Position numbers and translations under genes: made by a program. Shown piece after piece: positions 5,323 through 63,283 of a stretch of 64,000 bases of DNA (the stretch's first letter is position 1; each line of letters opens with the position of its first letter). The DNA lies in the IMG/VR virus record IMGVR_UViG_3300044796_000657, positions 248,001-312,000 of that record. One strand, written 5' to 3'. The notes beneath the pieces were generated by a model. That model searched no databases. It was given only the letters and a program-made list of their open reading frames with translations, and was not told the DNA's origin.

Positions 5323-5328
5323 TATTTA
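5323..5328 (-). promoter_or_regulatory. TAAATA late-promoter-like box
   Basis: TAAATA-aaggtt-ATG(5316). Confidence 0.5.
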
Positions 5329-5354
5329 GGGCTATGATCGCAATTTCTTCAAAG

Positions 5355-5606
5355 TCACTCTTTTTTCATAGCATCTTTATATTGCTTTGTTCTCTTGCAA
5401 CTAGAACACGTAACGGCACTAGCCAAACAACTGTGCTGAATAAGATTGCCGTGCTTACGGAAATCGTTATAGCTTGACATGTCCGGAGCCGTATAGATCG
5501 TGTCACCGCAAATAAAAGTCCCACAAGCTGTAAAATCAGATAAAGCGTAATGGACTGTAATTTTTGGTTCGATTGCTGCCTTCTTAACCTTCATAATAAT
5601 TCTCAC
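5355..5606 (-). CDS. Hypothetical Cys/His-containing protein
   Basis: 83-aa ORF coupled to the tyrS stop. Confidence 0.45.
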   Translation of the reverse strand: MRIIMKVKKAAIEPKITVHYALSDFTACGTFICGDTIYTAPDMSSYNDFRKHGNLIQHSCLASAVTCSSCKRTKQYKDAMKKE

Positions 5607-6760
5607 TGGAATACAATTGCGTACTTTCTGCCTACCCGTAAACGGCGACTAATGCCACCCGTCTCCATCTTAATTGCCAAGAATGGATCAATCACTTTTT
5701 CGCCGTCCAAATCCACGGCACCCTGAATAACCAAGCGACGGGCTTCATTGTTGCTAGTAGTCAAACCAGCAGCACAAATCAGCCTCATAAGCGTGGTGTC
5801 ATTCACCAAAACCTTAACTTCGGGAATGTCATCAGGCTCTTTGCGAAGACTGAATTGGTTAACCCATTGAACAGCCGCCGCCGCAGCCTTATCTGTACCA
5901 TGCATTGATTCTACAATACGAAGCGCAAGGGACTTTTTACTATCCAAAGGTGCGATCCAATCAATGCCATTCGTGAGCAAATCCACCCACTCTTGCATAA
6001 GTGTATCAGGAATGCTCATCACTTTACAGTACATTTCAAAAGGCTCTTCATCTACACCGATGTAGTTTCCGAGACTTTTGCCCATTTTCTTAACGCCGTC
6101 CATGCCCCGCAAGATCGGCAAAGTGATACAAACTTGCTGTTCCATACCAGCAAGTTTCTGCATATCACGGCCAAAATTCAAGTTAAACATCTGTTCTGTG
6201 CCGCCAAGTTCAACATCGGCAGCAACCATCACACTGTCGTACCCTTGTAGCATCGGGTACATCAACTCACTCACCTGAATAGGTTGTTCGGCTTTAAATC
6301 GATTGTTGAAATCCTCACGATCCAATATCTGACTGACTGTGAAGGTCTTAAGTTGCTCTAATGTCCATCGCAAATCGCATTTATTCAGCCAAGTACTGTT
6401 AAGATTGACTTCTGCCTTCTTGATGTCTACAACTTTACCAATTTGCTTCAAGTACTTCCGAGCATTATCCTTGGCTTCGTCAGGGGTGATTGAAGTGCTT
6501 CGAAGTTCATTTCTGCCTGTGGGATCGCCGATTGATGCCGTGAAGTCGCCCATAATGAGTACGGCAATATGTCCTTCATCTTGAAACGCCTTCATTAACC
6601 TCAATGGAACAGTATGTCCCAAGTGTACGTGCGGAGTGGTAGGATCAATGCCGTACTTGACACGCAAGGGACGACCCTTCTTCAGCTTCGCTTCCAAGGC
6701 GGGAACTTTTGAAGGGTCAAATTGCTTAACTTTTTCAAGTACCTTGCTCATATCATTCAT
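5603..6760 (-). CDS. tyrS: Tyrosyl-tRNA synthetase
   Basis: YGIDPTTPHVHLGH (HIGH), ELGGTEQMFN, KMGKSLGN (KMSKS) and a C-terminal S4 domain. Confidence 0.95.
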   Translation of the reverse strand: MNDMSKVLEKVKQFDPSKVPALEAKLKKGRPLRVKYGIDPTTPHVHLGHTVPLRLMKAFQDEGHIAVLIMGDFTASIGDPTGRNELRSTSITPDEAKDNARKYLKQIGKVVDIKKAEVNLNSTWLNKCDLRWTLEQLKTFTVSQILDREDFNNRFKAEQPIQVSELMYPMLQGYDSVMVAADVELGGTEQMFNLNFGRDMQKLAGMEQQVCITLPILRGMDGVKKMGKSLGNYIGVDEEPFEMYCKVMSIPDTLMQEWVDLLTNGIDWIAPLDSKKSLALRIVESMHGTDKAAAAAVQWVNQFSLRKEPDDIPEVKVLVNDTTLMRLICAAGLTTSNNEARRLVIQGAVDLDGEKVIDPFLAIKMETGGISRRLRVGRKYAIVFQ

Positions 6761-12041: not shown

Positions 12042-12524
12042 TTATCCTTCGCCATAAATATCTTTCAGCTTACTTTCCATATCCGACTGAGTAGAAGGCG
12101 ACGACATGACATTCTTTCCATAAAGACTGTCCATTTCCTTACGCATGTTGTAACAAAGCTCTTTTGCCGTACTATGAGCATAATCCATAGACTTCAAAAA
12201 GCCGTAAAGTTCATCCTTAACATACTCGGCCATTCTCACCCGTTCCAACAAAGCACCAACTTCTTCATCCGATTTGGCTGATGCTTCTGCCATCTTATCA
12301 CTCAAATTATGCGTTACCTTGTATTCACGCAACTTGGAATTGAATAAGACCGTATGCTGGTCGTTCAATCTCTTAGCAATAAAAGAAGCATCATTGTGCT
12401 TGTTTTGATAATACCTATGTAACGAAGCGTACTTGGTAAGAAAGTCATTGATATTCTCTTGCGAAAACTCCAATGCCTTGTCATCAAGATTAACGTCTTC
12501 TTTGCCGACTTTGACCATTCCCAT
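12042..12524 (-). CDS. UvsY-like recombination mediator
   Basis: 160-aa helical protein resembling T4 UvsY in size and pattern; next to the helicase. Confidence 0.55.
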   Translation of the reverse strand: MGMVKVGKEDVNLDDKALEFSQENINDFLTKYASLHRYYQNKHNDASFIAKRLNDQHTVLFNSKLREYKVTHNLSDKMAEASAKSDEEVGALLERVRMAEYVKDELYGFLKSMDYAHSTAKELCYNMRKEMDSLYGKNVMSSPSTQSDMESKLKDIYGEG

Positions 12525-13528
12525 TATTGTGCCTTTATTTGAAGAAACTCTTTTATCAAATCATCAATATTGTTAATATCTGAGTAGTGGATAATCAACA
12601 ATGGAATCTTTTTATCTTTAGCCCATCTACTTTTTATATGATCTCGTTTTTTTATAGCCGCCAAATTATCAATAGCATCATCACAACTTATTGTGTTAGA
12701 CCAATATACAGGAACATAATGTTGTATGCCATTATATTCAATAAGAAATTGATTTTCCTTAATGTTAACTAAAAAATCAAATGGCAACCTGTTGACACTA
12801 ATGCAATCTTCAAATGTGGCTTGCCTAATAAAAGTTAAATTTTGTTGAGACAAAAATTCAACAATCTTTTTTTCACCTCTTGATTCACAGCAAAAAGGAC
12901 AACCTCTGCCGCCAGATCGATTACATATCATCGCTTCCCATTGGTGTTCTTTAACAAAAGAACATTGCCACCAAACCTTTTTATGACTTCCTGCTGTCAC
13001 TTCATACGGCGTTATTTGATTTATGGAATGCCACTCTTGTGACAGAATTGGATGCGTTGTCGCCAAACAATTTGATTGTACAATTTTATGCGTACGACCG
13101 ACACTGCGGCAACAAGGACATCCTCTACCAGCAAGTCTTTTTACTGGACTTGCAAACCATTCGTGATCTTCAGCAACGAAACATTTCCACCAAACTTTAA
13201 TACCGCTACCAATAGTCAAATCAAACGGTGAAAAACTATTTTTCAGATGCCACTGTTTTGCTAACTCTGGCTCTTTTGTCGCAATACAATTAGACAGAGA
13301 TACTTTTTGCCCAGCACAAAAAGGACATTTCGTTTTTTCAATAACTCGTTTATTAACGGTAGTTTGCCACTCATGATCTTCGGCAGTTGAACATTTCCAC
13401 CATATTTTTTTATGACTTCCAAAGCTAATTTCAAAAGGATTTATGCCCAAATTTTTAGTCGGATGCCATTCTTTAACTATTTCTGGGTACAATTTACCGA
13501 AGCAGTTTTTATTCGTGACTTTTTTCAT
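12524..13528 (-). CDS. Zinc-ribbon-repeat protein with C-terminal PD-(D/E)xK/Vsr-like endonuclease; probable free-standing homing endonuclease
   Basis: Three KxWWxC...HEW...CP(F/C)C repeats, then SRGEKKI, LPFDF, IEYNGIQHY and IPLLII. Confidence 0.75.
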   Translation of the reverse strand: MKKVTNKNCFGKLYPEIVKEWHPTKNLGINPFEISFGSHKKIWWKCSTAEDHEWQTTVNKRVIEKTKCPFCAGQKVSLSNCIATKEPELAKQWHLKNSFSPFDLTIGSGIKVWWKCFVAEDHEWFASPVKRLAGRGCPCCRSVGRTHKIVQSNCLATTHPILSQEWHSINQITPYEVTAGSHKKVWWQCSFVKEHQWEAMICNRSGGRGCPFCCESRGEKKIVEFLSQQNLTFIRQATFEDCISVNRLPFDFLVNIKENQFLIEYNGIQHYVPVYWSNTISCDDAIDNLAAIKKRDHIKSRWAKDKKIPLLIIHYSDINNIDDLIKEFLQIKAQ

Positions 13529-14964
13529 TGAATTTCAATTTTTTTAGGCTCTACATTACCCGCTTTAGCTTTTCTATAATTGGTTAAGTGCATTTGCATT
13601 TCCTCTTTGGGAATTTCCGACATTAACAAAGTACCCGTATTCATCTTATAGTGAATTTCTTGCCTACTAATGCCGTCTCTATGTTTGATAGCAAACAAAC
13701 TACCAACATTACAACCAGATTCAGGTTTATTCAAAGACCAAATAGCATCCATCGGTCGAGCTTGACCAAAACTGTCGGCCATTGCATCATCATCGATATG
13801 CCCTTCAAAGTCCTGCGCCTCACGACCCTTGCGGTTAGCCTGAATAGCCGTCAATGTACAATGTAGCTCTTCCTGTCCAAAGGCACGCATTTCACGAACC
13901 AGCAATTGACGACTCTCGTAAGTCTTCATGCCGTGGATGTCTTTCAATTCACCGACGTAATCCACGCAAATCAAATCAGGCTTGAAACCATACAATCCCA
14001 ACTGAGAAACATACGCCCGGAAAGTATTAATGTCGGCAGAACCACCCGGATAATGCTTGATAATCAACTGACGAGTATCTTCATCATGCTTAACGTGCTC
14101 AAGAATTGCCTGCTTGACAATATTTTGATCCTGCAAAAGCATCTTGAATTCAGTATTGGAAAGCAAGGAGTCAAATCGTTTGGCGATCTTGTCTTGGCTC
14201 ATTTCCAACGTGATATACAAAACTTTCTTACTCAAAAGAAGGTTAGATGCTGCGGCGTTAATAAGGGCAATGGACTTACCGGCACCCGACAAACCTACGA
14301 AACAGCCGATTTCACCACGGGATAAACCCTTGGACGTAAGCATTTGATCGATGCCCTTGAAGCCGGAAGTAAAGATTTCCTTACCTGCCAACTCTTCTTG
14401 CATCCGCTGGTAACGTTCATCGAGGGTATTGAAATAATCCAATCCCAAGTCTTGACTCTTTTCGGTAGTTAACGCACTTCGCCACAAATCCCAAATCTTT
14501 CCATAAGGATCTTTGTCAGCTTTAATGAGATCGATGGTTTGGTGAACTGCGATCTTGATGGCTTGCTTCTTGGCGAAGTCGCAAACCTTGTCCATCAAGT
14601 AGTCACGGGTTAACGACCCCGGAACATAAGACATCAAAATCGCTTCCAATTCACCTAAGTGCAGGAAGAGGTGTTCTTTGTTCTTGCAACGTTCTTTGAG
14701 TTCTTGTTGTACGTAGGCTTTGTTTGGAAGTTGTTTGTATTGTCCGAAGAAATCAAAGACGATCTTACAAATGAGTTCGTGGGATAAGTCGCCGAAATAA
14801 GTCGGCTTCAACAAACTGAGACATTGAACCAGAAAGTGTCTGTCAGTTAACAGAACCGCAACGATTTGTTTGTCTATCTCGTAAGAATGGTCAAAATGGG
14901 CTTCTTCTTTTTTTTCCTGTATCAAACTATGAACTAACGCCTTGTCTTTATCACTAATCTGCAT
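13525..14964 (-). CDS. Replicative SF4 helicase, T4 gp41/DnaB-like
   Basis: Walker A GLSGAGKS, YITLEMS, Walker B ICVDY, TAIQANR, ADSFG, KHRDG. Confidence 0.9.
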   Translation of the reverse strand: MQISDKDKALVHSLIQEKKEEAHFDHSYEIDKQIVAVLLTDRHFLVQCLSLLKPTYFGDLSHELICKIVFDFFGQYKQLPNKAYVQQELKERCKNKEHLFLHLGELEAILMSYVPGSLTRDYLMDKVCDFAKKQAIKIAVHQTIDLIKADKDPYGKIWDLWRSALTTEKSQDLGLDYFNTLDERYQRMQEELAGKEIFTSGFKGIDQMLTSKGLSRGEIGCFVGLSGAGKSIALINAAASNLLLSKKVLYITLEMSQDKIAKRFDSLLSNTEFKMLLQDQNIVKQAILEHVKHDEDTRQLIIKHYPGGSADINTFRAYVSQLGLYGFKPDLICVDYVGELKDIHGMKTYESRQLLVREMRAFGQEELHCTLTAIQANRKGREAQDFEGHIDDDAMADSFGQARPMDAIWSLNKPESGCNVGSLFAIKHRDGISRQEIHYKMNTGTLLMSEIPKEEMQMHLTNYRKAKAGNVEPKKIEIQ

Positions 14965-14967
14965 AAT

Positions 14968-15213
14968 TTATTTTTCTACTAGGGTAAGCTGAATTACTAA
15001 ACCGAATTTATCTAACTGTGGGACGATCATATATTTGTTCAATCCTGCTTGAACGAGTATATCGTTAAAATATATGGTGTCAATCAATTCTTCATACGAC
15101 CGTTTCCACTCGTAAGGAGTTGACAAAGTAAACAAGTATTCATCATTGAGCAGTTGCTGCACCAAGTTGACAGCTTCACGGACTCTGACTTGAGTAGACC
15201 AATAGTTGTACAT
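14968..15213 (-). CDS. Hypothetical protein, possible paralog of 15229..15477
   Basis: N-terminus NYWSTQVRVREAV versus NNWLYEIRIREVV. Confidence 0.45.
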   Translation of the reverse strand: MYNYWSTQVRVREAVNLVQQLLNDEYLFTLSTPYEWKRSYEELIDTIYFNDILVQAGLNKYMIVPQLDKFGLVIQLTLVEK

Positions 15214-15217: not shown

Positions 15218-15223
15218 TATATA
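15218..15223 (-). promoter_or_regulatory. TATATA box variant
   Basis: TATATA-tgac-ATG(15213). Confidence 0.35.
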
Positions 15224-18071: not shown

Positions 18072-18077
18072 TATATA
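18072..18077 (+). promoter_or_regulatory. TATATA box variant
   Basis: TATATA-aaacaa-ATG(18084). Confidence 0.35.
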
Positions 18078-20618: not shown

Positions 20619-20624
20619 TATTTA
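20619..20624 (-). promoter_or_regulatory. TAAATA late-promoter-like box
   Basis: TAAATA-tatagg-ATG(20612). Confidence 0.5.
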
Positions 20625-33176: not shown

Positions 33177-33182
33177 TAAATA
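33177..33182 (+). promoter_or_regulatory. TAAATA late-promoter-like box
   Basis: TAAATA-tcttc-ATG(33188). Confidence 0.5.
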
Positions 33183-46582: not shown

Positions 46583-46701
46583 GGTCGCTTTGCCTATATA
46601 TGGGTATCGTACAGCGGACTTGCCGACTATTGCTATCTAAACAAGCAAAATATATCATAAGTCCTCAGTCAAGAAATTTAAAAAAATGATTATCTTAGCA
46701 G

Positions 46702-48234
46702 ATGAAGCAATTTGATGAGATGTTGGCAAGTTTTGAAAACAGCAATTCCGAACAATTTAAGAAGCAAACGGGGGTTGTTTATACACCCCCTTTTGTCGTT
46801 AAATACATTCTTGATAAAACCCTCACTTCGCTTTCCGTAGATACCAAGATTATCGACCCCGCTTGTGGGGGCGGTATATTCATTCTGTACGCAATAGAAT
46901 ACCTACGACACGTCACAGGCAAAGCGATAGATGAAATCATCGCAAACAACGTGTACGGCATCGACAACGACCCTAATGCCGTCGCTCTTGCCCATGAGGT
47001 TTTGACTCAATATAGCCAAGTCGCTTGCGGCAAAAAGCCATCTAAGATCAACATATATCATGGCGATTCTACCGACATTGAATTCCTGTCATCGTTGGGC
47101 AAATTCGACTACGTTGTCGGCAATCCTCCTTATGTCCGTATCCAGAACATTCCCGAAGATAAGCGGCAGTATTTGAAATCTTGGAGTATGGTTAATGGTG
47201 ATAGTGATCTGTATATTGCCTTTATTGAACTAGCCTTTTTTCTCTTGAAGTCAGACGGAAGATTGGGCTTCATCACGCCGAATTCTTATCTGAAAAACAA
47301 GTCAACGATCAATCTTTTGAATTGGCTGATCGATAACAGAAAGATCGTTGAGCTTATAGACTTTGAAGGTTATCAGATATTCGGTAAGAAGGCCACAACT
47401 TATACTAGCATTCTTATTGCTTCCAATGAAGAACAAAAATCCATGACCATGCGAAAATTAACTGGTATGGATGAAAATCTGGATAAGGTTTTATCAACGG
47501 ATGTCAAGTCTTATGAAGTTGTCAAATCCAAGAGTATTCTAATTCCTAGCAATAAGATCAATCGCTTGAACAAGTTTGAGAATGTTGGAACAAAGCTCAA
47601 AAACCTAGTTAAGATCAAGGTAGGATTGGCAACACTCGCTGATTCAATCTTTTATACGGATACTGACTTGGAATTGGTCAAACCGTGCGTCAAAGTCAGT
47701 AAGATCAAAAACCAATCTGACATTGTCAAACATACCAAGTCCGTCATTTATCCCTACCAAATCGTCAATGGTAAGGCTGTTCCTTATAGCGAACAAGAGT
47801 TGTCGCAATTCCCAAAGACGTATGAGTATTTGTTGAGTCGCAAGGAGGAATTGATGAAAAGGGATCGTGGCAAGATTGCTTTGTGGTACACTTATGGTAG
47901 AACGCAAGGGTTGACGAGCTTGTTTGGGCGGAAGATGTTAATGCCACCGATGATACAGGATGCTAAGTTTGTTATCTCAGAAGATCCAGATTTGTTGTAT
48001 TTGTCTGGTTATGCGATATTTGGTGATAGGCTTGAGATGTTAAAGATTGTCTTGGAGTCAGATATTTTCAATGAATACATTGCTTTGACGGCGAAGGATT
48101 TTCGTGGTGGATGGAAGGCATGTACCAAGCACGGTATAGAAAACTTTTCTATTCCAGATATTGACGATAATGAGATGGATGAGTTGAAAAATGATACAAA
48201 TGCTTTTTTGAACAGAAAGTATGGTCTGACATAA
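46702..48234 (+). CDS. Eco57I/TaqI-like N6-adenine DNA methyltransferase
   Basis: GVVYTP, IIDPACGGGIF, VVGNPPYVRIQ, DLYIAFIE, VKIKVGLATLADSIF. Confidence 0.9.
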   Translation: MKQFDEMLASFENSNSEQFKKQTGVVYTPPFVVKYILDKTLTSLSVDTKIIDPACGGGIFILYAIEYLRHVTGKAIDEIIANNVYGIDNDPNAVALAHEVLTQYSQVACGKKPSKINIYHGDSTDIEFLSSLGKFDYVVGNPPYVRIQNIPEDKRQYLKSWSMVNGDSDLYIAFIELAFFLLKSDGRLGFITPNSYLKNKSTINLLNWLIDNRKIVELIDFEGYQIFGKKATTYTSILIASNEEQKSMTMRKLTGMDENLDKVLSTDVKSYEVVKSKSILIPSNKINRLNKFENVGTKLKNLVKIKVGLATLADSIFYTDTDLELVKPCVKVSKIKNQSDIVKHTKSVIYPYQIVNGKAVPYSEQELSQFPKTYEYLLSRKEELMKRDRGKIALWYTYGRTQGLTSLFGRKMLMPPMIQDAKFVISEDPDLLYLSGYAIFGDRLEMLKIVLESDIFNEYIALTAKDFRGGWKACTKHGIENFSIPDIDDNEMDELKNDTNAFLNRKYGLT

Positions 48235-48237
48235 ATA
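48231..48237 (+). promoter_or_regulatory. ATAAATA late-promoter-like box
   Basis: ATAAATA-agat-ATG(48242). Confidence 0.55.
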
Positions 48238-48241
48238 AGAT

Positions 48242-49051: not shown

Positions 49052-49058
49052 GTCTATC

Positions 49059-49065
49059 ATAAATA
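49059..49065 (+). promoter_or_regulatory. ATAAATA late-promoter-like box
   Basis: ATAAATA-caat-ATG(49070). Confidence 0.55.
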
Positions 49066-49069
49066 CAAT

Positions 49070-49605: not shown

Positions 49606-49813
49606 CAGCGTTTGGGCTTTGAGTGACGTTGGGGTTTTGAAATTCAACGCTGATAATGCAGTTGGAGGTGGCCGGAAAGGCGTGCTTTGTAAGGCCGTCT
49701 TGTAGATATTTGATGATTTCCAGCACGCTGCCGGAAACTTCAACCCCCCACGATGCTTGGTTAGCTTGGACTGTTTCTTGTTGGTTTTTCCATTCATCAA
49801 ATTTAATAAGCAT
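49583..49813 (-). CDS. Small protein with capsid-targeting-like N-terminus
   Basis: Internal ATG at 49813 gives MLIKFDEWKNQQE. Confidence 0.45.
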   Translation of the reverse strand: MLIKFDEWKNQQETVQANQASWGVEVSGSVLEIIKYLQDGLTKHAFPATSNCIISVEFQNPNVTQSPNAVNNSATQ

Positions 49814-49820
49814 TATATTC

Positions 49821-50087: not shown

Positions 50088-50235
50088 TTTTCTTCTTCTT
50101 TTTATCATCGGACAAAATTACGGGCTTTGGATACATTCTGCCTACTGATCCGCCGATAGGTCTGGCGAAGTTGGCAATATCCCCTGTACTTGTCATAGTT
50201 TCTTCGATGTTTTTTAACCATTCTCTAAAAGTCAT
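50065..50235 (-). CDS. 56-aa protein with capsid-targeting-like N-terminus
   Basis: Not in the track: MTFREWLKNIEETMTSTGDIANFARPIGG...KKKKKNVKKENL; TAATG overlap with the upstream gene. Confidence 0.6.
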   Translation of the reverse strand: MTFREWLKNIEETMTSTGDIANFARPIGGSVGRMYPKPVILSDDKKKKKNVKKENL

Positions 50236-50708: not shown

Positions 50709-50712
50709 ACTC

Positions 50713-50718
50713 TATTTA
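50713..50718 (-). promoter_or_regulatory. TAAATA late-promoter-like box
   Basis: TAAATA-gagt-ATG(50708). Confidence 0.55.
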
Positions 50719-50728
50719 CACCTTGGGT

Positions 50729-50736
50729 TATAAATA
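50729..50736 (+). promoter_or_regulatory. TATAAATA, exact T4 late promoter consensus
   Basis: TATAAATA-gact-ATG(50741). Confidence 0.6.
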
Positions 50737-50740
50737 GACT

Positions 50741-52105: not shown

Positions 52106-52332
52106 AAGTCGCCACAACAAGGCTCAGATTCCATTTTCTTAATGGTTTCCAAGAGTATGCCGCCGTACGGATCAATATTACACGTAAACGAATCATTAAC
52201 GTCAATGTTGTAGGCTTCTAGGAACAAATGATGTACAAGTATCTGCGCCAATGGCTCAGTAGACCACGGGCAGCATACCATCAAATCGTCCAATTGCTCA
52301 GTTACGGTAAAGGTATCTTCTTGTATTGTCAT
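52102..52332 (-). CDS. Hypothetical protein
   Basis: 76-aa ORF. Confidence 0.4.
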   Translation of the reverse strand: MTIQEDTFTVTEQLDDLMVCCPWSTEPLAQILVHHLFLEAYNIDVNDSFTCNIDPYGGILLETIKKMESEPCCGDF

Positions 52333-52341
52333 TCAAGTAGT

Positions 52342-53199
52342 TTAACCAATAAAATCAGAAATTCTACTCAAGACTTCTTTCCAATTACCCAATTCTTTTT
52401 GTCGCCATATTTTCATGGTGGGATACCAAATACTGTCACCGGAACCCCATCGCCAATCATGCTGATAAGCCAAAGCCAAATGTACTGTTTTTCCCATCGC
52501 TGCTGCCAAATGAGCAACAGCCGTATCAACACTGACTACAGTATGACATTCCGCTATCAGTTTGGCTGTATCATTCAAGTCTGCCAACATTAGAGAATAA
52601 TCTTCGAATCTTAAGTCGGATTGTGTGACCATTAAACTTGTTAATTTTCTTCCATCCTTAACTAATAAACTAAAATCTTCTGCTGAGGATGACCTGATGC
52701 TGTCATCGGCGTGACCTGCAAATCCTGTCCATGCCACACCAATTCTCCCTTGGTCGTTATTGGGAATGTTAATGTACTGTTCGTTGATGATTGTTTTGAA
52801 GTGAGCGGGTAAACTGGAAACTGGAATTACAAAGTTGCAATTCGGCAAAGCATCACCACGAACTATTACGTCATAACCTTGGTTTTTCATCAAGTGAAAC
52901 AGTTCAGGTGCAACTTCCAATACGACATTTGACATTAAGTCTGTATATCGTACCCACATGATAAAATCGCCGAAACCTTGATCTTGGTAAACGAGAACTT
53001 TTCCTTGTTCACCTTTCCATGTTGGCATCGGGTAATGACTTCGTCTGTTAATTGTTGAGCGATGACCTTTGAGTCGCCATTCCAATTCAGGCCACGCTTC
53101 TTGCCATCTTCCCAAATAACCCAATACACATCCATATCGCCAATGAAGTTCGGCATCATTAGGGTTTTTGAAAATTTGATCTTCGAGATCTTTGAGCAT
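52342..53199 (-). CDS. TPR-associated GT9-like glycosyltransferase
   Basis: GRWQEAWPELEWR, DQGFGDFIMWVRY, GVAWTG, VSVDTAVAHLAAAMGK, DWRW, WYPTMKIWRQ. Confidence 0.8.
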   Translation of the reverse strand: MLKDLEDQIFKNPNDAELHWRYGCVLGYLGRWQEAWPELEWRLKGHRSTINRRSHYPMPTWKGEQGKVLVYQDQGFGDFIMWVRYTDLMSNVVLEVAPELFHLMKNQGYDVIVRGDALPNCNFVIPVSSLPAHFKTIINEQYINIPNNDQGRIGVAWTGFAGHADDSIRSSSAEDFSLLVKDGRKLTSLMVTQSDLRFEDYSLMLADLNDTAKLIAECHTVVSVDTAVAHLAAAMGKTVHLALAYQHDWRWGSGDSIWYPTMKIWRQKELGNWKEVLSRISDFIG

Positions 53200-53741
53200 T
53201 AACTATTTTTTTTACGAGTGGGCTTGTAATGAATAATAGCGTCCGAATCTGGGTATTTATTTTGCCATCCCATGCTGGCGTACCAAGCCTTCAATTTTTG
53301 TGTACTTAGTCCTTTGGGCGGCTTTTGGCCTTTAACTTTAGCGGGCGTTATTTCTTGGGGTTCGGCAACTAAAGTTATTCCCAATTTATTTGCGACACTT
53401 TGCAACCATTTCAGAGATGATGTTGCCAATCCTTTGCCACGTGCTTCTGGCTTAACAATAATTGCGGCAACTGTTAATTGTTTTGATTGCTTTGGGTCAT
53501 ATCCGGCAACCATTACCCTATTCTGATAAAGGTATAGGTCGTATTCTGATAATGCAATCTTCACATTTCCGTCTGGACTAACGATTGTAGGGTAATTTGT
53601 GCCACCCAATGAGACGACTTCGGGATTAGTACCCGGAATTAATCGATTAGATGGTGCTTCCCACCGCCAACCTTGTTTTTCAATTTCAGAACGCAAACTG
53701 ACAAATGGGTGTGCGGCTTCAATGAATAATCTAAAACTCAT
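53199..53741 (-). CDS. GNAT acetyltransferase with capsid-targeting-like N-terminus
   Basis: MSFRLFIE; IIVKPEARGKGLAT (motif A); LKAWYASMGW. Confidence 0.75.
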   Translation of the reverse strand: MSFRLFIEAAHPFVSLRSEIEKQGWRWEAPSNRLIPGTNPEVVSLGGTNYPTIVSPDGNVKIALSEYDLYLYQNRVMVAGYDPKQSKQLTVAAIIVKPEARGKGLATSSLKWLQSVANKLGITLVAEPQEITPAKVKGQKPPKGLSTQKLKAWYASMGWQNKYPDSDAIIHYKPTRKKNS

Positions 53742-53745
53742 CTTC

Positions 53746-53751
53746 TATATA
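53746..53751 (-). promoter_or_regulatory. TATATA box variant
   Basis: TATATA-gaag-ATG(53741). Confidence 0.4.
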
Positions 53752-53856
53752 TTGCTCGTAAAAATTAACTTTTACTTCAAGTTCCATCAAAAAGACGGAT
53801 AAAAATTTTTTGGTCGAGACTAACTATTACGTTATCTATAAAGTGAGGGTAGTACC

Positions 53857-54399
53857 ATTCCGATTTTATCCACTGATCTTTTGTTCAAATACTCAACAAC
53901 GACTGGGTCTGCCGGAAATACGACGGCTCAAGGCAATCCTAATAATGCGCTCGGAAAATATATTTCTACAACGCAATGGACGGGTGGTACCTTAAATGAC
54001 TTGTTTGACGACATTACGGGTGATGAAAACGCCAACTCGATTGTTGATTACCGCTGTATTTTCCTTCATAACAACCACGGATCGTTAACTTTGTTGAGTC
54101 CTAAGTTATGGATTGCTTCCGAAGTTTCTGGTGGTGCCAATATCGCTCTTGGTGTTGATACGACCGCCGCTTCTGTTATCGGTGCTTCGTCCGCTCAAGG
54201 TTTGACGATTGCCGATGAAACTACGGCTCCTTCCGGTGTTTCATTCAGTAGCCCAACTACCAAATCTGCTGGCCTTTCACTCGGTGACATTCCAGCCGGT
54301 CAATGTAAGGCATTCTGGTTCCGTCGCACGGCAACCAATAGTGCTGCTTTGAATAACGATGGCGTAACGGTACAAATTGAAGGCGATACGAGTGCGTAA
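53857..54399 (+). CDS. Probable virion structural protein (beta-rich), probable ATT start
   Basis: In-frame stop at 53839; GAGG-GTAGTACC-ATT gives MPILSTDLLFKYS; VDYRCIFLHN, FWFRRT. ORF track starts at TTG 53881. Confidence 0.6.
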   Translation: MPILSTDLLFKYSTTTGSAGNTTAQGNPNNALGKYISTTQWTGGTLNDLFDDITGDENANSIVDYRCIFLHNNHGSLTLLSPKLWIASEVSGGANIALGVDTTAASVIGASSAQGLTIADETTAPSGVSFSSPTTKSAGLSLGDIPAGQCKAFWFRRTATNSAALNNDGVTVQIEGDTSA

Positions 54400-54417
54400 T
54401 GAATGATTGAAACTATG

Positions 54418-54449
54418 AACAAAGCCCGCTATAATAGGCGGGCTTTGTT
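54418..54449 (+). terminator. Intrinsic terminator hairpin
   Basis: AACAAAGCCCGC-TATAATAG-GCGGGCTTTGTT. Confidence 0.75.
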
Positions 54450-54467
54450 ATTTAACGTGGAGATATT

Positions 54468-54674
54468 ATGTACTTTTACTTAAGACAGCGATCAAGTGGC
54501 ATGGTGTTGGAAAGTGATATTAATCAATCTCGTCCCATGTTAGAACCGGGTTTTATTAGATGGACGCCCGAAATTCAACACTCAATTGATATTACTCCTC
54601 AATTAATTGAACAACTACAAGTAGAGTGTGGTAATTGGGCTGCAAGACCAATTCCTACATGGTGGGAAAACTAA
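54468..54674 (+). CDS. Hypothetical protein
   Basis: 68 aa, GGAG SD. Confidence 0.45.
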   Translation: MYFYLRQRSSGMVLESDINQSRPMLEPGFIRWTPEIQHSIDITPQLIEQLQVECGNWAARPIPTWWEN

Positions 54675-54682
54675 TCACTGAT

Positions 54683-54689
54683 CTAAATA
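54683..54689 (+). promoter_or_regulatory. CTAAATA late-promoter-like box
   Basis: TAAATA-ctctcact-ATG(54698). Confidence 0.45.
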
Positions 54690-54697
54690 CTCTCACT

Positions 54698-55594
54698 ATG
54701 GACTTTAAACTTTGGTTAGAATATAGCGGGGCTAAATCGGTTCTCGTTTATCACGGTACAGATCCCAAAAACATTCCTTCTATTATGTCGCAGGGTTTGA
54801 TTCCAAATCCCAAAGCAAGAAAATGGGCTGATGATCCACATGCCAATTTCAATTCAGCAAGCCGCAAATCAATTGGTGGTATTTATTTAACCACCAATCT
54901 ACAAACGGCCTTTTCTGCTGCCCCACCGAGAACTGCTTGTATTGTTGTGGCCGAAGTACAGCCGAGAAGTATGTTGGCGGATGAAGATGATTTGATGTCA
55001 ATGGGACAAGCAAGCGATCACGAATATACTTTATTGGAATTGTTTTTTGCGATCAAAACGAATACCAATCACGAATTCGTAGAGCAAATGAAAGCCAAAT
55101 ACGAACAAAGTGTATTCGCAAGAATTACATGGAAGATTCCAAATATATCACCACAATTGAAAATTAGAGTTAAGCAAATTCTCGATGACGCATTTCCTTA
55201 CGTTGTAGACCGTCAAACAGCACACGTTCATACAGATGAATTTCGCAATAGAAAGTATTACCACAAAGAAGCCAAGGATGTTCAACAACCCAATAAGCAA
55301 GCTGCGGAAGCCGCTTATCAGAAACACCTAGATTTGGCAACCAGAGCCTTGAAGTCAATCGGCAATCCTTATAGTCGTAAAGAAAACAGTTTGTTCATGT
55401 TCGTCGGACGGCTAATGGAACCAATTAGATTCAGTGGTGCGAATAAAATTGTATGCGTTATTGAAACTTGGCTTAATGAAAAAAATAAGACAAGAGTGAA
55501 ATTGCTTTACGGAAGCGTACCAGATAAGCTCATTAAGGATTGGAACTCAGCCATTGGCCCGTGGGAAAAGGCCATTAGCGAAGAGGGCAATTAA
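54698..55594 (+). CDS. Putative ADP-ribosyltransferase (H-Y clade, PARP/Tpt1-like fold) with capsid-targeting-like N-terminus
   Basis: MDFKLWLE; LVYHGT.PKN..SI..QGL.P; GGIYLTTN...A. Confidence 0.6.
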   Translation: MDFKLWLEYSGAKSVLVYHGTDPKNIPSIMSQGLIPNPKARKWADDPHANFNSASRKSIGGIYLTTNLQTAFSAAPPRTACIVVAEVQPRSMLADEDDLMSMGQASDHEYTLLELFFAIKTNTNHEFVEQMKAKYEQSVFARITWKIPNISPQLKIRVKQILDDAFPYVVDRQTAHVHTDEFRNRKYYHKEAKDVQQPNKQAAEAAYQKHLDLATRALKSIGNPYSRKENSLFMFVGRLMEPIRFSGANKIVCVIETWLNEKNKTRVKLLYGSVPDKLIKDWNSAIGPWEKAISEEGN

Positions 55595-55596
55595 CG

Positions 55597-55629
55597 AATA
55601 AAACCCACTTATTATAAGTGGGTTTTATT
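55597..55629. terminator. Bidirectional terminator
   Basis: AATAAAACCCACTTAT-T-ATAAGTGGGTTTTATT between convergent genes. Confidence 0.8.
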
Positions 55630-55635
55630 GCGATT

Positions 55636-57135
55636 TCAATAAGACGAACTACTAGATCCGGTTTCACATGTTGAAACACGCATTCTCGGAAGATCGTACT
55701 TTAACCAATCACGATAAATCTTGGTAAAATCTCTTATCATTTTTTCAATTGATGAACATAGGTCATTCATCCCGTCAATGGTAGCCTTCCAATCACACTT
55801 ACAAGTAAACGCAAGAATAAAATCATTCAAATTTTTCAATGCATTTTGAATTGGTGTAAAATAATCTTTAACAGTAGCAAAAGAATTCAGTATTGCTGTT
55901 CCAATTTTACAACAAGCTTCACTCTTACTGCAATAAAGATTCTTAAGAGCAATCATTTCGTCATTCGTTTTATTGACTTCTTGGATGATAGCATTAGCAC
56001 TGTAAGTAATAGTATTCAAACGATTGAATACAGCTAAATTGGCAGCATCACACTGAGCTTGTCTTTCAGGAGGAGCAGCAACAGCATTTACTCTATCGCA
56101 TAAGCAACCTACAATTTGCTGTCTCAAATAAGTGCAAATGCTCTTACAGTTATCGTCTCCTCCTGCACACTGAGGAACTACGTTTTCGGGTGTATTGGTG
56201 TCAGTGAGGAGTTGTCCAAACTTGTTACAGCCTATTTCTACAACTTTGTTAAGTGCAAATTTCATCAATGCATCAATTTGCCTTCTTTCGGCTTCATCGG
56301 GGCTTATTCTTCTTGCACCTGAATCAACAGCGTATTCGTAATATAATCTTTGTGCTTCGGTAAATGTGCTTCTCGTAACACCAAACGGTGAAACTTGAAT
56401 CGTATATTTTAAAACATCCGAAGTTAAGGTGCGGGAAATACCAAACGCATCGGTATAATTAGTGGCGTCAGCACCCATTGTTTCGAATAACTTAATTACG
56501 CAAGCATCCTCTGCGGGAGTAGGAGTTGGGAAAAACAAAGCTAATGGTCCACCGCCGCCTTTTGGTCCACCTTTTGGACCACCTTTTGGGCCAAGTCCTC
56601 TTGGCCCGGTGCCCGGCGATACTGTTGCAGATGGTGCTGCAGGAACAGGAACGACTTGCGGTCTAATAATAGCCGTCGGCTTTGGAAGTTTAACTCCGGG
56701 TTGCTCGACGGAAGAGAAAGGCTCTCCTAGAGGGCCGGATATAATTGGTTGGCCATTTGACGGCACAATTGGGCTTCCTTGTGGCGGCACCGTAGTTAAC
56801 GAATATGGTCCTCTTGCACCACCAGTACTCATGCCTTTATCATAACCCATACCTTGATCGCCAACAATAAGTTGTCCGTTGCCGAGGCGTCCATTAGCAT
56901 ATGGTTGCGCTGGCATAGGTATACCAGGACCAGTAGATGGTGCTGGAGCAGGTTGCGGTCTGACCGTACCCGGAATTAATTGGCCAGTATTCCTATCAAA
57001 TTGTGCACCATCGAGTCTTTGTCCTGCTCCATATGGCATTGCACTATTTCCTTGTCCTGCCTGTGGCATTGGTGGGAATGGACCGAGAGGTCCGGGGGTG
57101 CCGGGGATTGGAGGTGTACCGGGTGGTGGTGCCAT
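55636..57135 (-). CDS. Pro/Gly-rich N-terminus / Cys-rich helical C-terminus protein, probable paralog of 3033..4655
   Basis: Starts MAPPPGTPP; ends CETGSSSSY; about 14 Cys in the C-terminal half. Confidence 0.6.
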   Translation of the reverse strand: MAPPPGTPPIPGTPGPLGPFPPMPQAGQGNSAMPYGAGQRLDGAQFDRNTGQLIPGTVRPQPAPAPSTGPGIPMPAQPYANGRLGNGQLIVGDQGMGYDKGMSTGGARGPYSLTTVPPQGSPIVPSNGQPIISGPLGEPFSSVEQPGVKLPKPTAIIRPQVVPVPAAPSATVSPGTGPRGLGPKGGPKGGPKGGGGPLALFFPTPTPAEDACVIKLFETMGADATNYTDAFGISRTLTSDVLKYTIQVSPFGVTRSTFTEAQRLYYEYAVDSGARRISPDEAERRQIDALMKFALNKVVEIGCNKFGQLLTDTNTPENVVPQCAGGDDNCKSICTYLRQQIVGCLCDRVNAVAAPPERQAQCDAANLAVFNRLNTITYSANAIIQEVNKTNDEMIALKNLYCSKSEACCKIGTAILNSFATVKDYFTPIQNALKNLNDFILAFTCKCDWKATIDGMNDLCSSIEKMIRDFTKIYRDWLKYDLPRMRVSTCETGSSSSSY

Positions 57136-58342: not shown

Positions 58343-58348
58343 TATATA
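58343..58348 (-). promoter_or_regulatory. TATATA box variant
   Basis: TATATA-acgtt-ATG(58337). Confidence 0.4.
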
Positions 58349-58370: not shown

Positions 58371-58376
58371 TAAATA
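58371..58376 (+). promoter_or_regulatory. TAAATA late-promoter-like box
   Basis: TAAATA-acttc-ATG(58382). Confidence 0.55.
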
Positions 58377-58796: not shown

Positions 58797-58806
58797 TTAT
58801 TTAACA

Positions 58807-61800: not shown

Positions 61801-63270
61801 GAAAAGACGACCTTCAGTAACATACAAATTGCCGTTATCCATAGTGAATTTTTCGGCATTGTTATCAATTTTTAGACATGTATCATGAGCACCAATTGTA
61901 ATTGTTTTGTTATTGACATTTAATCCGAAACCAAAACCGAATGCATTATTCGGATCATCCGTACCACCCTGAAATACCGTTCCAAAAATACAGTCAGTGC
62001 ATGAAAAATTACCTTCAATATTCGTATTTCCAAAAGCACCTTCAACATTTTGAGCAACAGAGCCAGTTGTGCCATCTTCATTAATGTTTACTGTAAACGG
62101 ACTATTGGCTTCAACGGCGATCTTAAAGTTCGTAACGGTTTCGGCAAGAGTCCCACCGATTGTTACACCATATGTTCCTCCTGTAATGCTTTCATTATTA
62201 TCAAATTCAAAGACATATTGTTCACCATTGGTATCTTGAAAACTGACGCCATAACCATCTACTACGCTTTGACGACTAAAATCAAACTCTGCCGAAGCAG
62301 GCGCAAGTGCATCACTGAAATGATTGTTGTTTCCAATCAACATAATATTGGTATAAGTGTCACCGATGACATTAACATCCTCGCCTCCGTTGAGATTGTT
62401 AATGTTGATAGCATCGAGAATATCGCCGCCGTTCATATTTAGAACACCAGCAGGGTCTTCGTCTGCCCCTTTCATGATCAAGGCACTAATATTGTGAAGA
62501 TAACTAACTCCGGCCCCGCCACACGATTCTACACCACCAACAAATGCTATGCCCGGCGTATAAATTCCCGATCCAAATTGGAATGTTTCTTGATCGGAAT
62601 TAAAACTGACTATGGACTCTTCACCCGCACCAAAAACAAGTGTGGGTGTTTGAACTAGATCAAAAGCCACTTGATCGGTCGTATTCAAACTTTGATCAAA
62701 TGAGTCCCCACCACCGCCTCCACCTGTTGCTGCCCATGAAGTTGTCGTGCCGTTAGTAGTCAAGAACTGTCCACTGTGTCCGGTTTGTGTTGGAAAAATA
62801 CCGGCAGCATCACCCGTAATATTCAAATGATGAACATCTAGTGTTCCTGTATAAGTCCCATTGTTGCCACTTAAAGTATCAGCCATCAATTGGCCATCCA
62901 CACCGGCATTATTGCTGACAACGAGATTGTTAAACGTGACGTCATCGGTTGTATTCAAATCCTGATCAAACGAACTGCCACCACCACTAATGGTTTTGAA
63001 TATGATTGTTTCACTTTCAGAATCATATGCCAAAACTCTATTGTTTGCTTTATTGGACGTATCAACGTTAATACCGTCAATGGTATTATCATCTACGGTT
63101 TTGAATTCTATCGCTTGCGTATCAGCGTTATAGAATAAGACTTTTCCGTCACCCTTGTTTGTAACATCAATCTTTATCCCTTTGATAAAATTTGCATCCG
63201 TTCTATTGGTGGATGCAAACTTAAGAGTTATAAATGGAACATAGGCGCCGTTGAGAAAATACATTGTCAT
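58807..63270 (-). CDS. Large tail-fibre/adhesin-like protein with five internal repeats
   Basis: 1487 aa, acidic and Gly/Asn/Thr-rich. FPTQTGHSGQFLTTNGTTTSW fibre-type motif, duplicated SFDQ.LNTTD, and five A..F.F...G..V.....Y..(E)F...G...I units. Confidence 0.65.
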   Translation of the reverse strand: MTMYFLNGAYVPFITLKFASTNRTDANFIKGIKIDVTNKGDGKVLFYNADTQAIEFKTVDDNTIDGINVDTSNKANNRVLAYDSESETIIFKTISGGGSSFDQDLNTTDDVTFNNLVVSNNAGVDGQLMADTLSGNNGTYTGTLDVHHLNITGDAAGIFPTQTGHSGQFLTTNGTTTSWAATGGGGGGDSFDQSLNTTDQVAFDLVQTPTLVFGAGEESIVSFNSDQETFQFGSGIYTPGIAFVGGVESCGGAGVSYLHNISALIMKGADEDPAGVLNMNGGDILDAININNLNGGEDVNVIGDTYTNIMLIGNNNHFSDALAPASAEFDFSRQSVVDGYGVSFQDTNGEQYVFEFDNNESITGGTYGVTIGGTLAETVTNFKIAVEANSPFTVNINEDGTTGSVAQNVEGAFGNTNIEGNFSCTDCIFGTVFQGGTDDPNNAFGFGFGLNVNNKTITIGAHDTCLKIDNNAEKFTMDNGNLYVTEGRLFLGQDDDPNNYAQVYGNGSTISVQAIGGDAEIINSYCEVELSSEEDDQGNTYGLLYFDTTEASFNTMQLKASRVDIGDNTVNGRNTFVFGDNNTTGSDGTPAQATLTFTSIPTNGQTVTIEVLKAAGATTTYTLEFDDDMSVTEGNIPVTIAGSSSAQANNFLDALSEGNVPLGYGVDGSIVQLTQNFTGTDGNTSISSDYFGSSSFSGGLNPLVNIYSIGTGQDNQVENTLKIGIDDVNLTFNGNNSLIEVGGTLHFDSAYIGLNNEDNTTFIASGEGGVDLYMSTTNNFIVQSASIQMGGGNNLNGPNNLVAIGFNNSTNRSAASAILNFDFTAGSISNGDYVTFQAGAVELSNNYEFTNGVRSIDGSIIVRIGTTGYDANNTTTNFFEMFQAGPGFEITATQTGPTTILFTQANGTAGNTAFTGNLNGGFFPSAFTNGDVDNGATASCDFGIGGTITEGDTIGFTATSGNVYNFYFTNVGTHTDGIQVAIAGTYSAANTKFAFLNAHNYQSQDAVFNVDIGGNLLTQVYQGESGNTEVVGTLAGTIFETQFHDGSDIGTYMTAFGKGLTVSVDNSSRFGVDANYIEALGDTNTLNLHATHINVSPGITINNTLHESTPLESGWLIQKENSELVWGYNVNPDNDEIDNKSNAAFKLGFQGTAGYNGLQIQGVDAGEEATTWDNHQTLLNLGVDGQLEISGPLGTHAAAPPSIVEGDVHKMFFWLRDDESGFAPMVTTVDAMGTVVDHTLLSDGDFLVGPDTNNNLTIGNDNTVGHEPAQGAASFNFGSQTVVDGDTIVLTDTNGNVYTFEFDDNSSVSGGNIPITIFNDGGYSAMFTSQNFYNEITTNYSSHFIVFLESNVGPSGTLAQAVYGAAGNRSLSGTLANNVFAPTFIEGADISENQYAFGFGITSNIDNSVVVGTVDAQVLCRTTGEDPAIDLIAPAVNASGIINAAWFNATNYFSIGGVQGYTGSFQSGDGMLVEVVGGIITNVSSPG

Positions 63271-63277
63271 AGTAAGA

Positions 63278-63283
63278 TATTTA
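63278..63283 (-). promoter_or_regulatory. TAAATA late-promoter-like box
   Basis: TAAATA-tcttact-ATG(63270). Confidence 0.5.

What the first reader, a model, noticed from the sequence alone, without database searches (positions are those of the whole stretch)
5323..63283. TAAATA/TATATA box 4-8 nt before the ATG of 14 genes: near-leaderless late transcripts
Seen: TAAATA before ATGs at 5316, 20612, 33188, 48242, 49070, 50708, 50741 (full TATAAATA), 54698, 58382 and 63270; TATATA before 15213, 18084, 53741 and 58337. Nearly all lack an SD, whereas operon-internal genes often have GGAG. Known: TATAAATA is the T4 gp55 late promoter, with transcription starting a few nt downstream. Inference: transcription would start at or next to the ATG, so late/virion-cargo genes are made as leaderless or near-leaderless mRNAs. 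Back-to-back boxes at 50713/50729 and 58343/58371 form compact divergent promoter pairs.
Basis: partly seen in the sequence, partly recalled or inferred. Interest (0 to 1): 0.62.

Follow-up and report, generated by a model that had tools for sequence, protein, structure and literature searches.

The report
Start-codon-hugging TANATA box in huge phages
About 6% of the genes of this 430-kb uncultured peat phage, and of its distant huge-phage relatives, carry a strict six-base TANATA box 4-5 bases before their ATG, most likely a minimal promoter that makes messenger RNAs with almost no leader, though no transcript ends have been mapped.

Summary
In the window there are 14, against 0-2 at control spacings.

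Genome-wide, TAAATA four bases before an ORF-opening ATG is the most enriched of all hexamer and spacing combinations (17 seen, 0.9 expected). The motif sharpens to TANATA-(N4-5)-ATG. Only position 3 may vary.

Box genes mostly lack a Shine-Dalgarno. They start with ATG, usually preceded by a pyrimidine. They are 7-fold enriched at divergent junctions. Some sit just after terminators.

A 595-kb relative shows the same signal. In two gene families the box is kept before every ortholog examined, while the flanks are not conserved.

Best reading: a -10-only promoter that starts transcription at or within a few bases of the AUG (confidence about 0.6). No transcript 5' ends could be mapped.

The T4 gp55 "late promoter" label is not supported. 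No gp55 or gp45 homologue was found. The T4 box lies 13-34 nt from ATGs. Box genes include a primase, the DnaB-helicase operon, methyl- and glycosyltransferases, and the operon holding a phage IF3.

A translational operator in place of an SD is the main rival.

The parts
5323..5328 (-). TAAATA box, 6 nt before ATG 5316 (190-aa ORF 4744-5316)
   Evidence: N6 spacing; AAGG lies between box and ATG, too close to act as an SD
15218..15223 (-). TATATA box, 4 nt before ATG 15213 (81-aa ORF heading the DnaB-like helicase operon 12042-15213)
18072..18077 (+). TATATA box, 6 nt before ATG 18084 (230 aa), divergent junction
20619..20624 (-). TAAATA box, 6 nt before ATG 20612 (267 aa), divergent from the gene at 20668
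   Evidence: the box is kept before orthologs in LR756511, L278, L279 (TAGATA) and L280
33129..33157 (+). intrinsic terminator (13-bp stem plus T run) 20 nt upstream of the next box
33177..33182 (+). TAAATA box, 5 nt before ATG 33188 (491 aa); the alternative ATG 33143 lies inside the terminator hairpin
48232..48237 (+). TAAATA box, 4 nt before ATG 48242 (269 aa); its TAA is the stop codon of the upstream methylase gene
49060..49065 (+). TAAATA box, 4 nt before ATG 49070 (70 aa)
49703..49708 (+). possible extra box TAGATA, 4 nt before ATG 49713 (92 aa, inside ORF 49656-49991)
50713..50718 (-). TAAATA box, 4 nt before ATG 50708 (157 aa); half of a back-to-back pair in a 32-bp intergenic region
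50729..50736 (+). TATAAATA (box 50731-50736), 4 nt before ATG 50741 (454 aa, weak amidoligase match); other half of the pair
53746..53751 (-). TATATA box, 4 nt before ATG 53741 (GNAT-like 180 aa, then a GT9-like 285 aa)
54684..54689 (+). TAAATA box, 8 nt before ATG 54698 (298 aa); weakest member, the ORF could start at TTG 54635
58343..58348 (-). TATATA box, 5 nt before ATG 58337 (60 aa); half of a back-to-back pair in a 44-bp intergenic region
58371..58376 (+). TAAATA box, 5 nt before ATG 58382 (127 aa); other half of the pair
63278..63283 (-). TAAATA box, 7 nt before ATG 63270 (1487-aa protein with no family match)

Best explanation
TANATA is a minimal, -10-type promoter element with no -35 partner. 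A bacterial-type RNA polymerase holoenzyme reads it, probably host core enzyme with a phage-directed specificity factor. In this lineage of huge phages it is placed so that transcription begins at the A of the start codon or within 1-4 nt upstream of it.

The resulting mRNAs are leaderless or nearly so. They carry no Shine-Dalgarno and must be translated through the 5'-AUG route. Most other genes in the same genome use AAGGAG-type ribosome-binding sites.

Shown here: the motif, its strict spacing, its link to transcription-unit starts, its conservation in relatives, and the lack of an SD.

Inferred: that it is read as DNA by RNA polymerase, where transcription starts, and which factor reads it. 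The small FliA-like sigma of 173 aa, conserved in the 595-kb relative, is only a candidate.
For: 1. Sharp spacing peak. TAAATA at N4 is 17 against 0.88 expected, the best of all hexamer and spacing combinations. In the relative LR756511, N4 and N5 each have 15 against 1.7 expected. In seven further relatives N5 has 14 and every other spacing has 4 or fewer.

2. An in-silico mutation scan shows five invariant positions and one free one, giving TANATA, in both genomes. That pattern fits base-specific protein recognition.

3. Association with transcription-unit starts. 21 of 38 box genes sit at divergent junctions, against 83 of 601 other genes (odds ratio 7.7, p=1.2e-8). In the relative it is 36 of 65 against 140 of 917 (p=1.4e-12). 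Some divergent intergenic regions are only 13-44 bp and contain little but the boxes. Some boxes lie 20-30 nt after strong terminators.

4. Start-site signature. A pyrimidine precedes the A of ATG in 30 of 38 box genes, against 57% of SD-led genes (p=0.009). In the relative it is 50 of 65 against 44% (p=6e-7).

5. The ATG is the real start codon. 17 of 22 TAAATA-N4-ATG copies open long ORFs, and there are almost no GTG or TTG starts. M1 is invariant in a 27-sequence alignment of one box-gene family.

6. There is no -35 and no extended -10. Sigma-70-type sites are not enriched in the region.

7. Phylogenetic footprint. Nine of nine orthologs of the 275-aa box gene and five of five orthologs of the window gene at 20612 keep TANATA about 5 nt before the ATG. 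Identity is 48-78% at the protein level and the flanks are unconserved.

8. Geometry. In T4 P23 the box ends at -6, so the start is the sixth base after it (PMC7892883). With N5 spacing that base is the A of ATG.

9. The first 40 nt of box genes are slightly less structured (-3.09 against -4.19 kcal/mol, p=0.03).
Against: - No transcript 5' end was observed. The one metatranscriptome that holds this phage is available only as contigs, with flat depth. One contig runs 18 nt past ATG 50708, across its box. Another spans the whole divergent intergenic region at 53742-53880. That is either DNA carry-over or transcription from elsewhere.
- The box occupies the position an SD would (-10 to -5), so an RNA-level role fits the spacing equally well.
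- Eight of 38 box genes are tightly packed operon-internal genes. In one conserved family the box lies inside or abuts the upstream gene.
- In this genome the modal spacing is N4. That puts the A at the fifth base after the box, closer than T4's start geometry (sixth base) and, from my own recall of E. coli start-site selection studies, closer than sigma-70 normally allows.
- Only 2 of 13 box genes with an ortholog in the 595-kb relative have a box there too.
- No factor that reads the box has been identified.
Confidence: 0.6

Rival explanations
1. TANATA is an RNA-level translation signal. It would be a non-SD ribosome-binding or operator site at -10 to -5 on ordinary leadered or polycistronic mRNAs, read by a phage protein or by a ribosome modified by phage factors. 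These phages encode IF3 and bS21.
For: The box sits exactly where SD hexamers peak in this genome (spacing 4-6) and replaces them. It is conserved at operon-internal positions, for example inside or at the stop of the upstream gene in L271 and L272. The clade encodes IF3 and bS21 next to a conserved box gene. RNA-library contigs cross two boxes.
Against: It does not predict the 7-fold enrichment at divergent junctions or the placement just after terminators. Nor does it predict back-to-back boxes filling 13-44-bp divergent spacers where no other promoter-like element is seen. Five invariant bases with a free centre look like protein-DNA (-10-type) recognition rather than rRNA pairing. No known 16S segment is complementary to the box (my own knowledge, not tested here).
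Confidence: 0.2
2. It is a true T4-type late promoter system. A gp55-like late sigma, too diverged to detect, together with a clamp-coupled activator would drive late virion genes.
For: TAAATA is the 3' six bases of the T4 late box, and there is no -35. The terminase is of the T4 type, with about 30% identity to T4-like cyanophage terminases. The N5 spacing matches T4's box-to-start distance. The conserved 275-aa box-gene product has virion-like beta domains (Z 8-12.8). The 1487-aa box gene has weak fibre-like leads.
Against: There is no match to phrog_234 or phrog_12791 at E up to 10. phmmer finds no gp55, gp45, gp44, gp62 or gp43. The phage's small sigma is FliA-like with a region-4 remnant, and is unrelated to gp55 by BLASTP. 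The replisome is PolIII-alpha, DnaB and DnaG rather than T4-type. The T4-specific first two bases (TA) are absent, and position 3 of the hexamer is free. Box genes include a primase, the helicase operon and modification enzymes. T4 boxes are 13-34 nt from ATGs.
Confidence: 0.1
3. The box is a -10 element of the unknown host's own housekeeping or alternative sigma. Leaderless starts would then reflect a host habit rather than a phage-specific system.
For: The same box occurs in phages as different as 23-49% protein identity, whose second, phage-specific motifs differ (GTGACCATACA against AGCTGTAC). That would fit a shared host-side reader. No phage RNA polymerase was found.
Against: The last base is A where sigma-70-type elements need T at -7. 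The spacing to the start is shorter than in leaderless genes of known bacteria (my own knowledge). The host is unknown, and an aldehyde-dehydrogenase search gave no closer than 40% identity to many phyla, so this could not be tested.
Confidence: 0.1

Closest known systems
Bacteriophage T4 late promoters (TATAAATA read by gp55, with gp33 and the gp45 sliding clamp)
   Same: An A/T box at the -10 position with no -35 element. TAAATA equals the last six bases of the T4 box. With N5 spacing the A of ATG falls where T4 P23 starts, the sixth base after the box (PMC7892883, PMC2988020).
   Different: The motif is a six-base TANATA with a free third position and no conserved TA in front. No gp55, gp45 or gp44/62 homologues were found. 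T4 boxes lie 13-34 nt from the ATG and give leadered, SD-bearing mRNAs, and T4 has no TAAATA-N4-ATG at all. The gene set is not restricted to virion genes.
Leaderless mRNAs, such as lambda cI from pRM and the many leaderless genes of Mycobacterium, Deinococcus and Thermus and their phages (my own knowledge; PMC10491246 for lambda cI)
   Same: A promoter -10 element at a fixed short distance from an AUG that is both the 5' end and the start codon. No SD, and strong preference for AUG.
   Different: In those systems the -10 element is a sigma-70-type TANNNT ending 6-7 nt before the A. Here it is TANATA ending 4-5 nt before it. Here it is a minority class (about 6% of genes) inside a genome that otherwise uses strong SD sites, and it is conserved across a lineage of huge phages.
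Poxvirus late promoters (TAAATG initiator overlapping the start codon; my own knowledge, a resemblance only)
   Same: A TAAAT-type element fused to the ATG, so that transcription starts at the start codon.
   Different: That is a eukaryotic virus with its own multisubunit polymerase and slippage-made poly(A) leaders. Here the box and the ATG are separated by 4-5 nt, and no viral polymerase gene was found.
Jumbo-phage promoters read by phage multisubunit polymerases (phiKZ, AR9, 201phi2-1)
   Same: Short phage-specific promoter motifs in very large phage genomes.
   Different: No beta or beta-prime homologues were found here. For phiKZ, no leaderless transcripts were detected in early-infection dRNA-seq (PMC8244752).

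Membership tests
T4-type late transcription system | 8-bp TATAAATA box | tested here: not met
   Only 1 of the 14 window boxes is the full 8-mer. The base before the hexamer is C or G in 29 of 38 cases. The consensus is TANATA.
T4-type late transcription system | gp55 late sigma encoded by the phage | tested here: not met
   phrog_234 and phrog_12791 gave no match at E up to 10. phmmer with T4 gp55 found nothing. The 173-aa sigma against gp55 gives BLASTP E=3.2.
T4-type late transcription system | gp45 sliding clamp with gp44/62 loader, and gp33 co-activator | tested here: not met
   phmmer with gp45, gp44 and gp62 found nothing. gp33 was not tested.
T4-type late transcription system | no -35 element | tested here: met
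   No information content upstream of the box. The best -35 match equals background (2.97 against 2.94).
T4-type late transcription system | drives late (virion) genes through leadered, SD-bearing mRNAs | tested here: not met
   T4 box-to-ATG distance is 13-34 nt, against 4-5 nt here. Box genes include a primase, the helicase operon, a methyltransferase and glycosyltransferases. Timing itself is untestable here.
Leaderless mRNA | primary 5' end at the A of the AUG | not testable with these tools
   The only RNA run is held as contigs, which cannot show starts.
Leaderless mRNA | no Shine-Dalgarno, AUG start codon | tested here: met
   A loosely defined SD occurs in 7 of 38 box genes, against 462 of 601 others. 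At N4 there are 17 ATG, 0 GTG and 1 TTG.
Leaderless mRNA | promoter element at a fixed short distance from the start codon | tested here: met
   Spacing peak at N4 (this genome) and N5 (relatives).
Sigma-70-type promoter | TTGACA-like -35, 16-18 bp spacer, TATAAT with T at the last position | tested here: not met
   No -35. The last base of the box is invariably A. Consensus sigma-70 sites are not enriched (38 against 41.7 expected).

The most novel reading that the evidence does not exclude
A widespread lineage of huge phages would run a dedicated leaderless-mRNA regulon. The lineage has hundreds of metagenomic contigs, some of 280-634 kb. A gp55-independent, -10-only TANATA promoter, read by an as yet unidentified factor, would fuse the transcription start to the AUG of about 6% of genes. 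The phage-encoded IF3 and bS21, which sit in the same conserved gene block and of which IF3 lies downstream of a box, would tune host ribosomes between SD-led and leaderless messages during infection.
Probability: 0.25. Interest if true: 0.8.

Novelty: new variant of a known kind. Interest (0 to 1): 0.66.

Why it matters
Nothing is known experimentally about how uncultured huge phages organise transcription.

This work gives a crisp, testable cis-element, TANATA-N4/5-ATG. It has defined invariant positions, dozens of instances per genome, and conservation across distant relatives.

If it is a promoter, these phages make a class of leaderless mRNAs alongside strongly SD-dependent ones. That would give phage-encoded IF3 and bS21 a concrete job to be tested. 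It would also give annotators a way to place start codons and transcription units in such genomes. Gene callers currently truncate at least one of these genes.

It also shows that a resemblance to the T4 late box does not by itself imply a gp55 system.

Tried and rejected
- **RNA evidence.** One peat metatranscriptome run holds 84% of the words of window 46001-56000. It is stored as contigs with flat depth, so it gives no usable 5' ends.
- **Close relatives in IMG/VR.** A search with the 454-aa box-gene product found none. A search for the second motif GTGACCATACACCC gave only single chance hits.
- **Nucleotide search of the phage collection.** No match.
- **Host identification.** The phage aldehyde dehydrogenase gave 30-40% identity to many phyla, so no host call was possible.
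- **Families for window box genes.** PHROGs gave nothing for ten of them. Pfam gave only weak GNAT and amidoligase hints.
- **Phage RNA polymerase.** No match to Rpb2_6, Rpb1_1 or the T7-type family. The T7-type control rang nowhere, so that negative is weak.
- **Atlas look-ups of the giant proteins.** The 1487-aa protein scored 0.8 or below, leads only. The 1928-aa protein gave nothing.
- **Homologues of the 173-aa sigma.** The word-based search found only the protein itself, so co-occurrence with the box could not be tested.
- **Literature.** No paper links TAAATA, leaderless transcripts and phages, and none mentions LR756511.
- **Duplication as the source of the motif.** Rejected. Box genes are not paralogs and share nothing outside the hexamer.
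- **General AT-richness.** Rejected because of the spacing peak and the permutation controls.
- **Start-codon choice (ATG against GTG or TTG).** It fits leaderless translation but is not statistically decisive.
Full report
**Source**

The window is bases 248001-312000 of a single 430,229-bp virus record (43% G+C, CheckV 97% complete). A peat metagenome holds it at 100% of sampled words and may be its source. It carries 37 tRNAs and a tmRNA. It also has PolIII-alpha, DnaB-, DnaG- and PolA-type replication genes and a T4-type large terminase.

Its only clear relative among deposited phages is LR756511.1, a 595-kb uncultured phage. The two share 49% identity in a helicase and 116 reciprocal best hits out of 639 genes. 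It is therefore an uncultured huge phage.

**Checking the observation**

All 14 sites are as described. In the window, TA[AT]ATA lies 4-8 nt before an ATG opening an ORF of 60 aa or more 14 times. Ten control spacing bands give 0-2.

Genome-wide results:
- TAAATA is 3-5 times more likely than any of its 14 base permutations to sit 3-9 nt before such an ATG.
- The distance histogram has a single spike at 4 nt, with 17 cases.
- Across all 4096 hexamers at spacings 0-12, TAAATA at spacing 4 (17 against 0.88 expected) beats every Shine-Dalgarno hexamer.
- Of 22 TAAATA-N4-ATG copies, 17 open long ORFs. Other triplets at that place occur 0-6 times and almost never open ORFs. The ATG is therefore the start codon and not part of the motif by accident.

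**Sharpening the motif**

I substituted each base of TAAATA in turn and counted occurrences 4-5 nt before ORF-opening ATGs.

| Hexamer | This genome (seen / expected) | LR756511 (seen / expected) |
|---|---|---|
| TAAATA | 21 / 1.8 | 30 / 3.5 |
| TACATA | 6 / 0.8 | 7 / 1.4 |
| TAGATA | 6 / 0.8 | 16 / 2.0 |
| TATATA | 6 / 0.7 | 18 / 2.2 |

Every change at positions 1, 2, 4, 5 or 6 falls to background. The element is therefore TANATA-(N4-5)-ATG.

Nothing upstream is conserved. There is no -35 and no TG extension. The base before the ATG is a pyrimidine in 30 of 38 box genes here and 50 of 65 in the relative. That is significantly more than in SD-led genes.

**Where the boxes sit**

My own gene call gave 639 genes. 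Of these, 38 have a box, 462 have an SD-like site and 139 have neither.

- Box genes are at divergent junctions in 21 of 38 cases, against 83 of 601 for the rest (odds ratio 7.7, p=1.2e-8). In the relative the figures are 36 of 65 against 140 of 917 (p=1.4e-12).
- Several divergent spacers are tiny and hold little but the boxes. Examples are 32 bp at 50708/50741 and 44 bp at 58337/58382 in the window, and 13 bp at genome position 352434 outside it.
- Some co-directional cases follow strong terminators. The 13-bp-stem hairpin at 33129-33157 lies 20 nt before the box of the gene at 33188.
- Among intergenic TAAATA copies that point at a gene within 150 nt, 27 of 40 lie 3-8 nt from the ATG and none lie at 9-20 nt.
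- Box genes are not paralogs. Their first 40 nt are slightly less structured than those of other genes.

**Relatives**

The 595-kb relative shows the same enrichment: TAAATA at N4 and at N5, 15 each against 1.7 expected, and TATATA at N5, 12 against 1.1.

Boxes are often not at the same genes in the two genomes. Only 2 of 13 box genes with an ortholog keep a box in both. I followed those two families into metagenomes.

The 275-aa family (genome 226103-226930) has 591 homologues, some on contigs of 280-634 kb.
- In seven contigs fetched (51-67% identity, G+C 38-47%) every ortholog has TAAATA, TATATA or TACATA exactly 5 nt before its ATG. With this genome (N4) and LR756511 (N5), that makes 9 of 9.
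- The flanks are unconserved. In two loci the box lies inside the upstream gene or at its stop codon.
- In those 146 kb the box-to-ATG histogram peaks at N5, with 14 cases and no other spacing above 4.

The window gene at 20612 has orthologs in three further contigs. These carry TAAATA or TAGATA 5 (plus or minus 2) nt before the ATG. In L280 the divergent neighbour carries a box too.

I chose these two families because both genomes already had the box. The ten additional orthologs are therefore the independent evidence.

**Comparison with T4**

In T4 the 32 TATAAATA copies lie 13-34 nt from the next ORF-opening ATG (24 cases), and TAAATA-N4-ATG does not occur at all.

The cryo-EM study of the gp55 open complex flips the bases at -12, -9 and -8 of the P23 box. 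That puts the last A at -6 and the start at the sixth base after the box (PMC7892883). With N5 spacing, the mode in the relatives, that sixth base is the A of ATG. With N4, the mode in this genome, the A is the fifth base.

The phage has no detectable gp55, gp45, gp44/62 or gp43. It has no multisubunit or T7-type polymerase either.

It encodes two sigma-70-family proteins.
- One is 173 aa and FliA-like, with a weak region 4. It has an ortholog in the relative.
- The other is 261 aa and has no clear ortholog there.

Assigning the conserved box to the conserved sigma is only a guess.

**Which genes carry the box**

Recognisable box genes, or the operons they head, are:
- a DnaG-type primase
- a ligase-like protein
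- a methyltransferase
- glycosyltransferases
- a GNAT-like protein followed by a GT9-like protein
- the small gene heading the DnaB-like helicase operon
- the 275-aa protein, followed by a TPP enzyme and phage IF3

The 275-aa protein is an all-beta protein (model pLDDT 78). Its best structural matches are parts of phage capsids, baseplates and tail tips (Z 8-12.8 over about 80-110 residues). The 1487-aa window protein has only weak fibre-like leads. The terminase has no box.

The class is therefore functionally mixed, and "late/virion cargo" is not established.

**RNA**

One metatranscriptomic run holds the region, but only as contigs with flat depth. Contigs cross two boxes. This neither supports nor refutes start sites at the ATG.

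**Interpretation**

The spacing spike, the invariant positions and the conservation show a functional signal with near certainty.

A -10-only promoter giving leaderless or near-leaderless mRNAs is the best single explanation (about 0.6). It accounts for all of the following:
- the association with transcription-unit starts
- the placement next to terminators
- the back-to-back pairs
- the pyrimidine-purine step at the ATG
- the missing SD

The main rival is an RNA-level translation operator that replaces the SD (about 0.2). It fits the position and the operon-internal conservation but not the junction bias.

A cryptic T4-type late system and a host-sigma element each remain possible (about 0.1 each).

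**Novelty**

I found no description of this element or of leaderless classes in huge phages. The clade paper reports IF3 and S21 genes and SD usage but no promoters (PMC7162821). It is a new variant of known things, namely minimal -10 promoters and leaderless mRNAs, in an unexplored group.

Noticed in passing
G000 4,988-172,000 (outside the window; none in window): A second, far more abundant motif, GTGACCATACA(CCC). There are 104 copies, 102 of them between 5 and 175 kb and 87 on the minus strand. About half (55 of 104) lie within 60 nt of the next called start (median 43 nt), and many of those have an SD in between. It is very dense at 28-47 kb among small ORFs. Box genes lie almost entirely (36 of 38) in the other part of the genome, 170-428 kb. 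This looks like a separate phage-specific promoter class. No other IMG/VR contig has more than one copy.
   Followed up: partly
LR756511.1 (loci L005-L034): The 595-kb relative has a different abundant intergenic motif, AAGCTGTAC(T/A), with 46 intergenic copies. A subset ends about 11 nt before ATGs.
   Followed up: no
G000 223482-223730(-) and 231564-231695(-); loci L271-L277: The phage encodes IF3 and ribosomal protein bS21. Across relatives the order dCMP deaminase, 275-aa protein, TPP enzyme, IF3 is conserved, with bS21 and peptide deformylase a few kb upstream. IF3 lies downstream of a conserved box gene.
   Followed up: partly
G000 as a whole: Three of this genome's own proteins are on record on a contig of 614,480 bp. 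The 430-kb record is rated 97% complete and labelled 'provirus', but it may be only part of a larger genome.
   Followed up: no
G000 399874-399948; LR756511 290614-290689: Aragorn calls a tRNA-like gene with a four-base anticodon in both genomes (ggaa here, gaaa in the relative), within the tRNA clusters.
   Followed up: no
window 23694-25043 (+): A BCS1-like AAA ATPase (BCS1_N, AAA and lid domains), a family typical of mitochondria. The same gene sits near the 20612-family gene in relatives L279 and L280.
   Followed up: no
G000 355786-356787(-): A 333-aa protein with a full-length match to Pfam Volactin (E=1e-56). It is 58% identical to its ortholog in the 595-kb relative.
   Followed up: no
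G000 226103-226930(-) (L045): The 275-aa box-gene product belongs to a very large, well-conserved family (591 homologues, 50-78% identity) with no Pfam domain and a Cys-rich N-terminus with invariant cysteines. A public gene call truncates it to 249 aa, missing the box-adjacent ATG that is invariant in the alignment.
   Followed up: partly
window 49601-49800: This is the only stretch of window 48001-54000 with no coverage in the RNA-library contigs. It lies over the small ORFs between 49279 and 49991. A contig ends at 49279, next to the stop of the gene at 49070-49282.
   Followed up: no
G000 145223-145300 and 146852-146930 (minus-strand upstreams): Sigma-70-like -35/-10 pairs precede the Clp_N and 261-aa-sigma operon and the ClpX-like gene. 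This suggests a third, host-type promoter class in front of the larger phage sigma.
   Followed up: no
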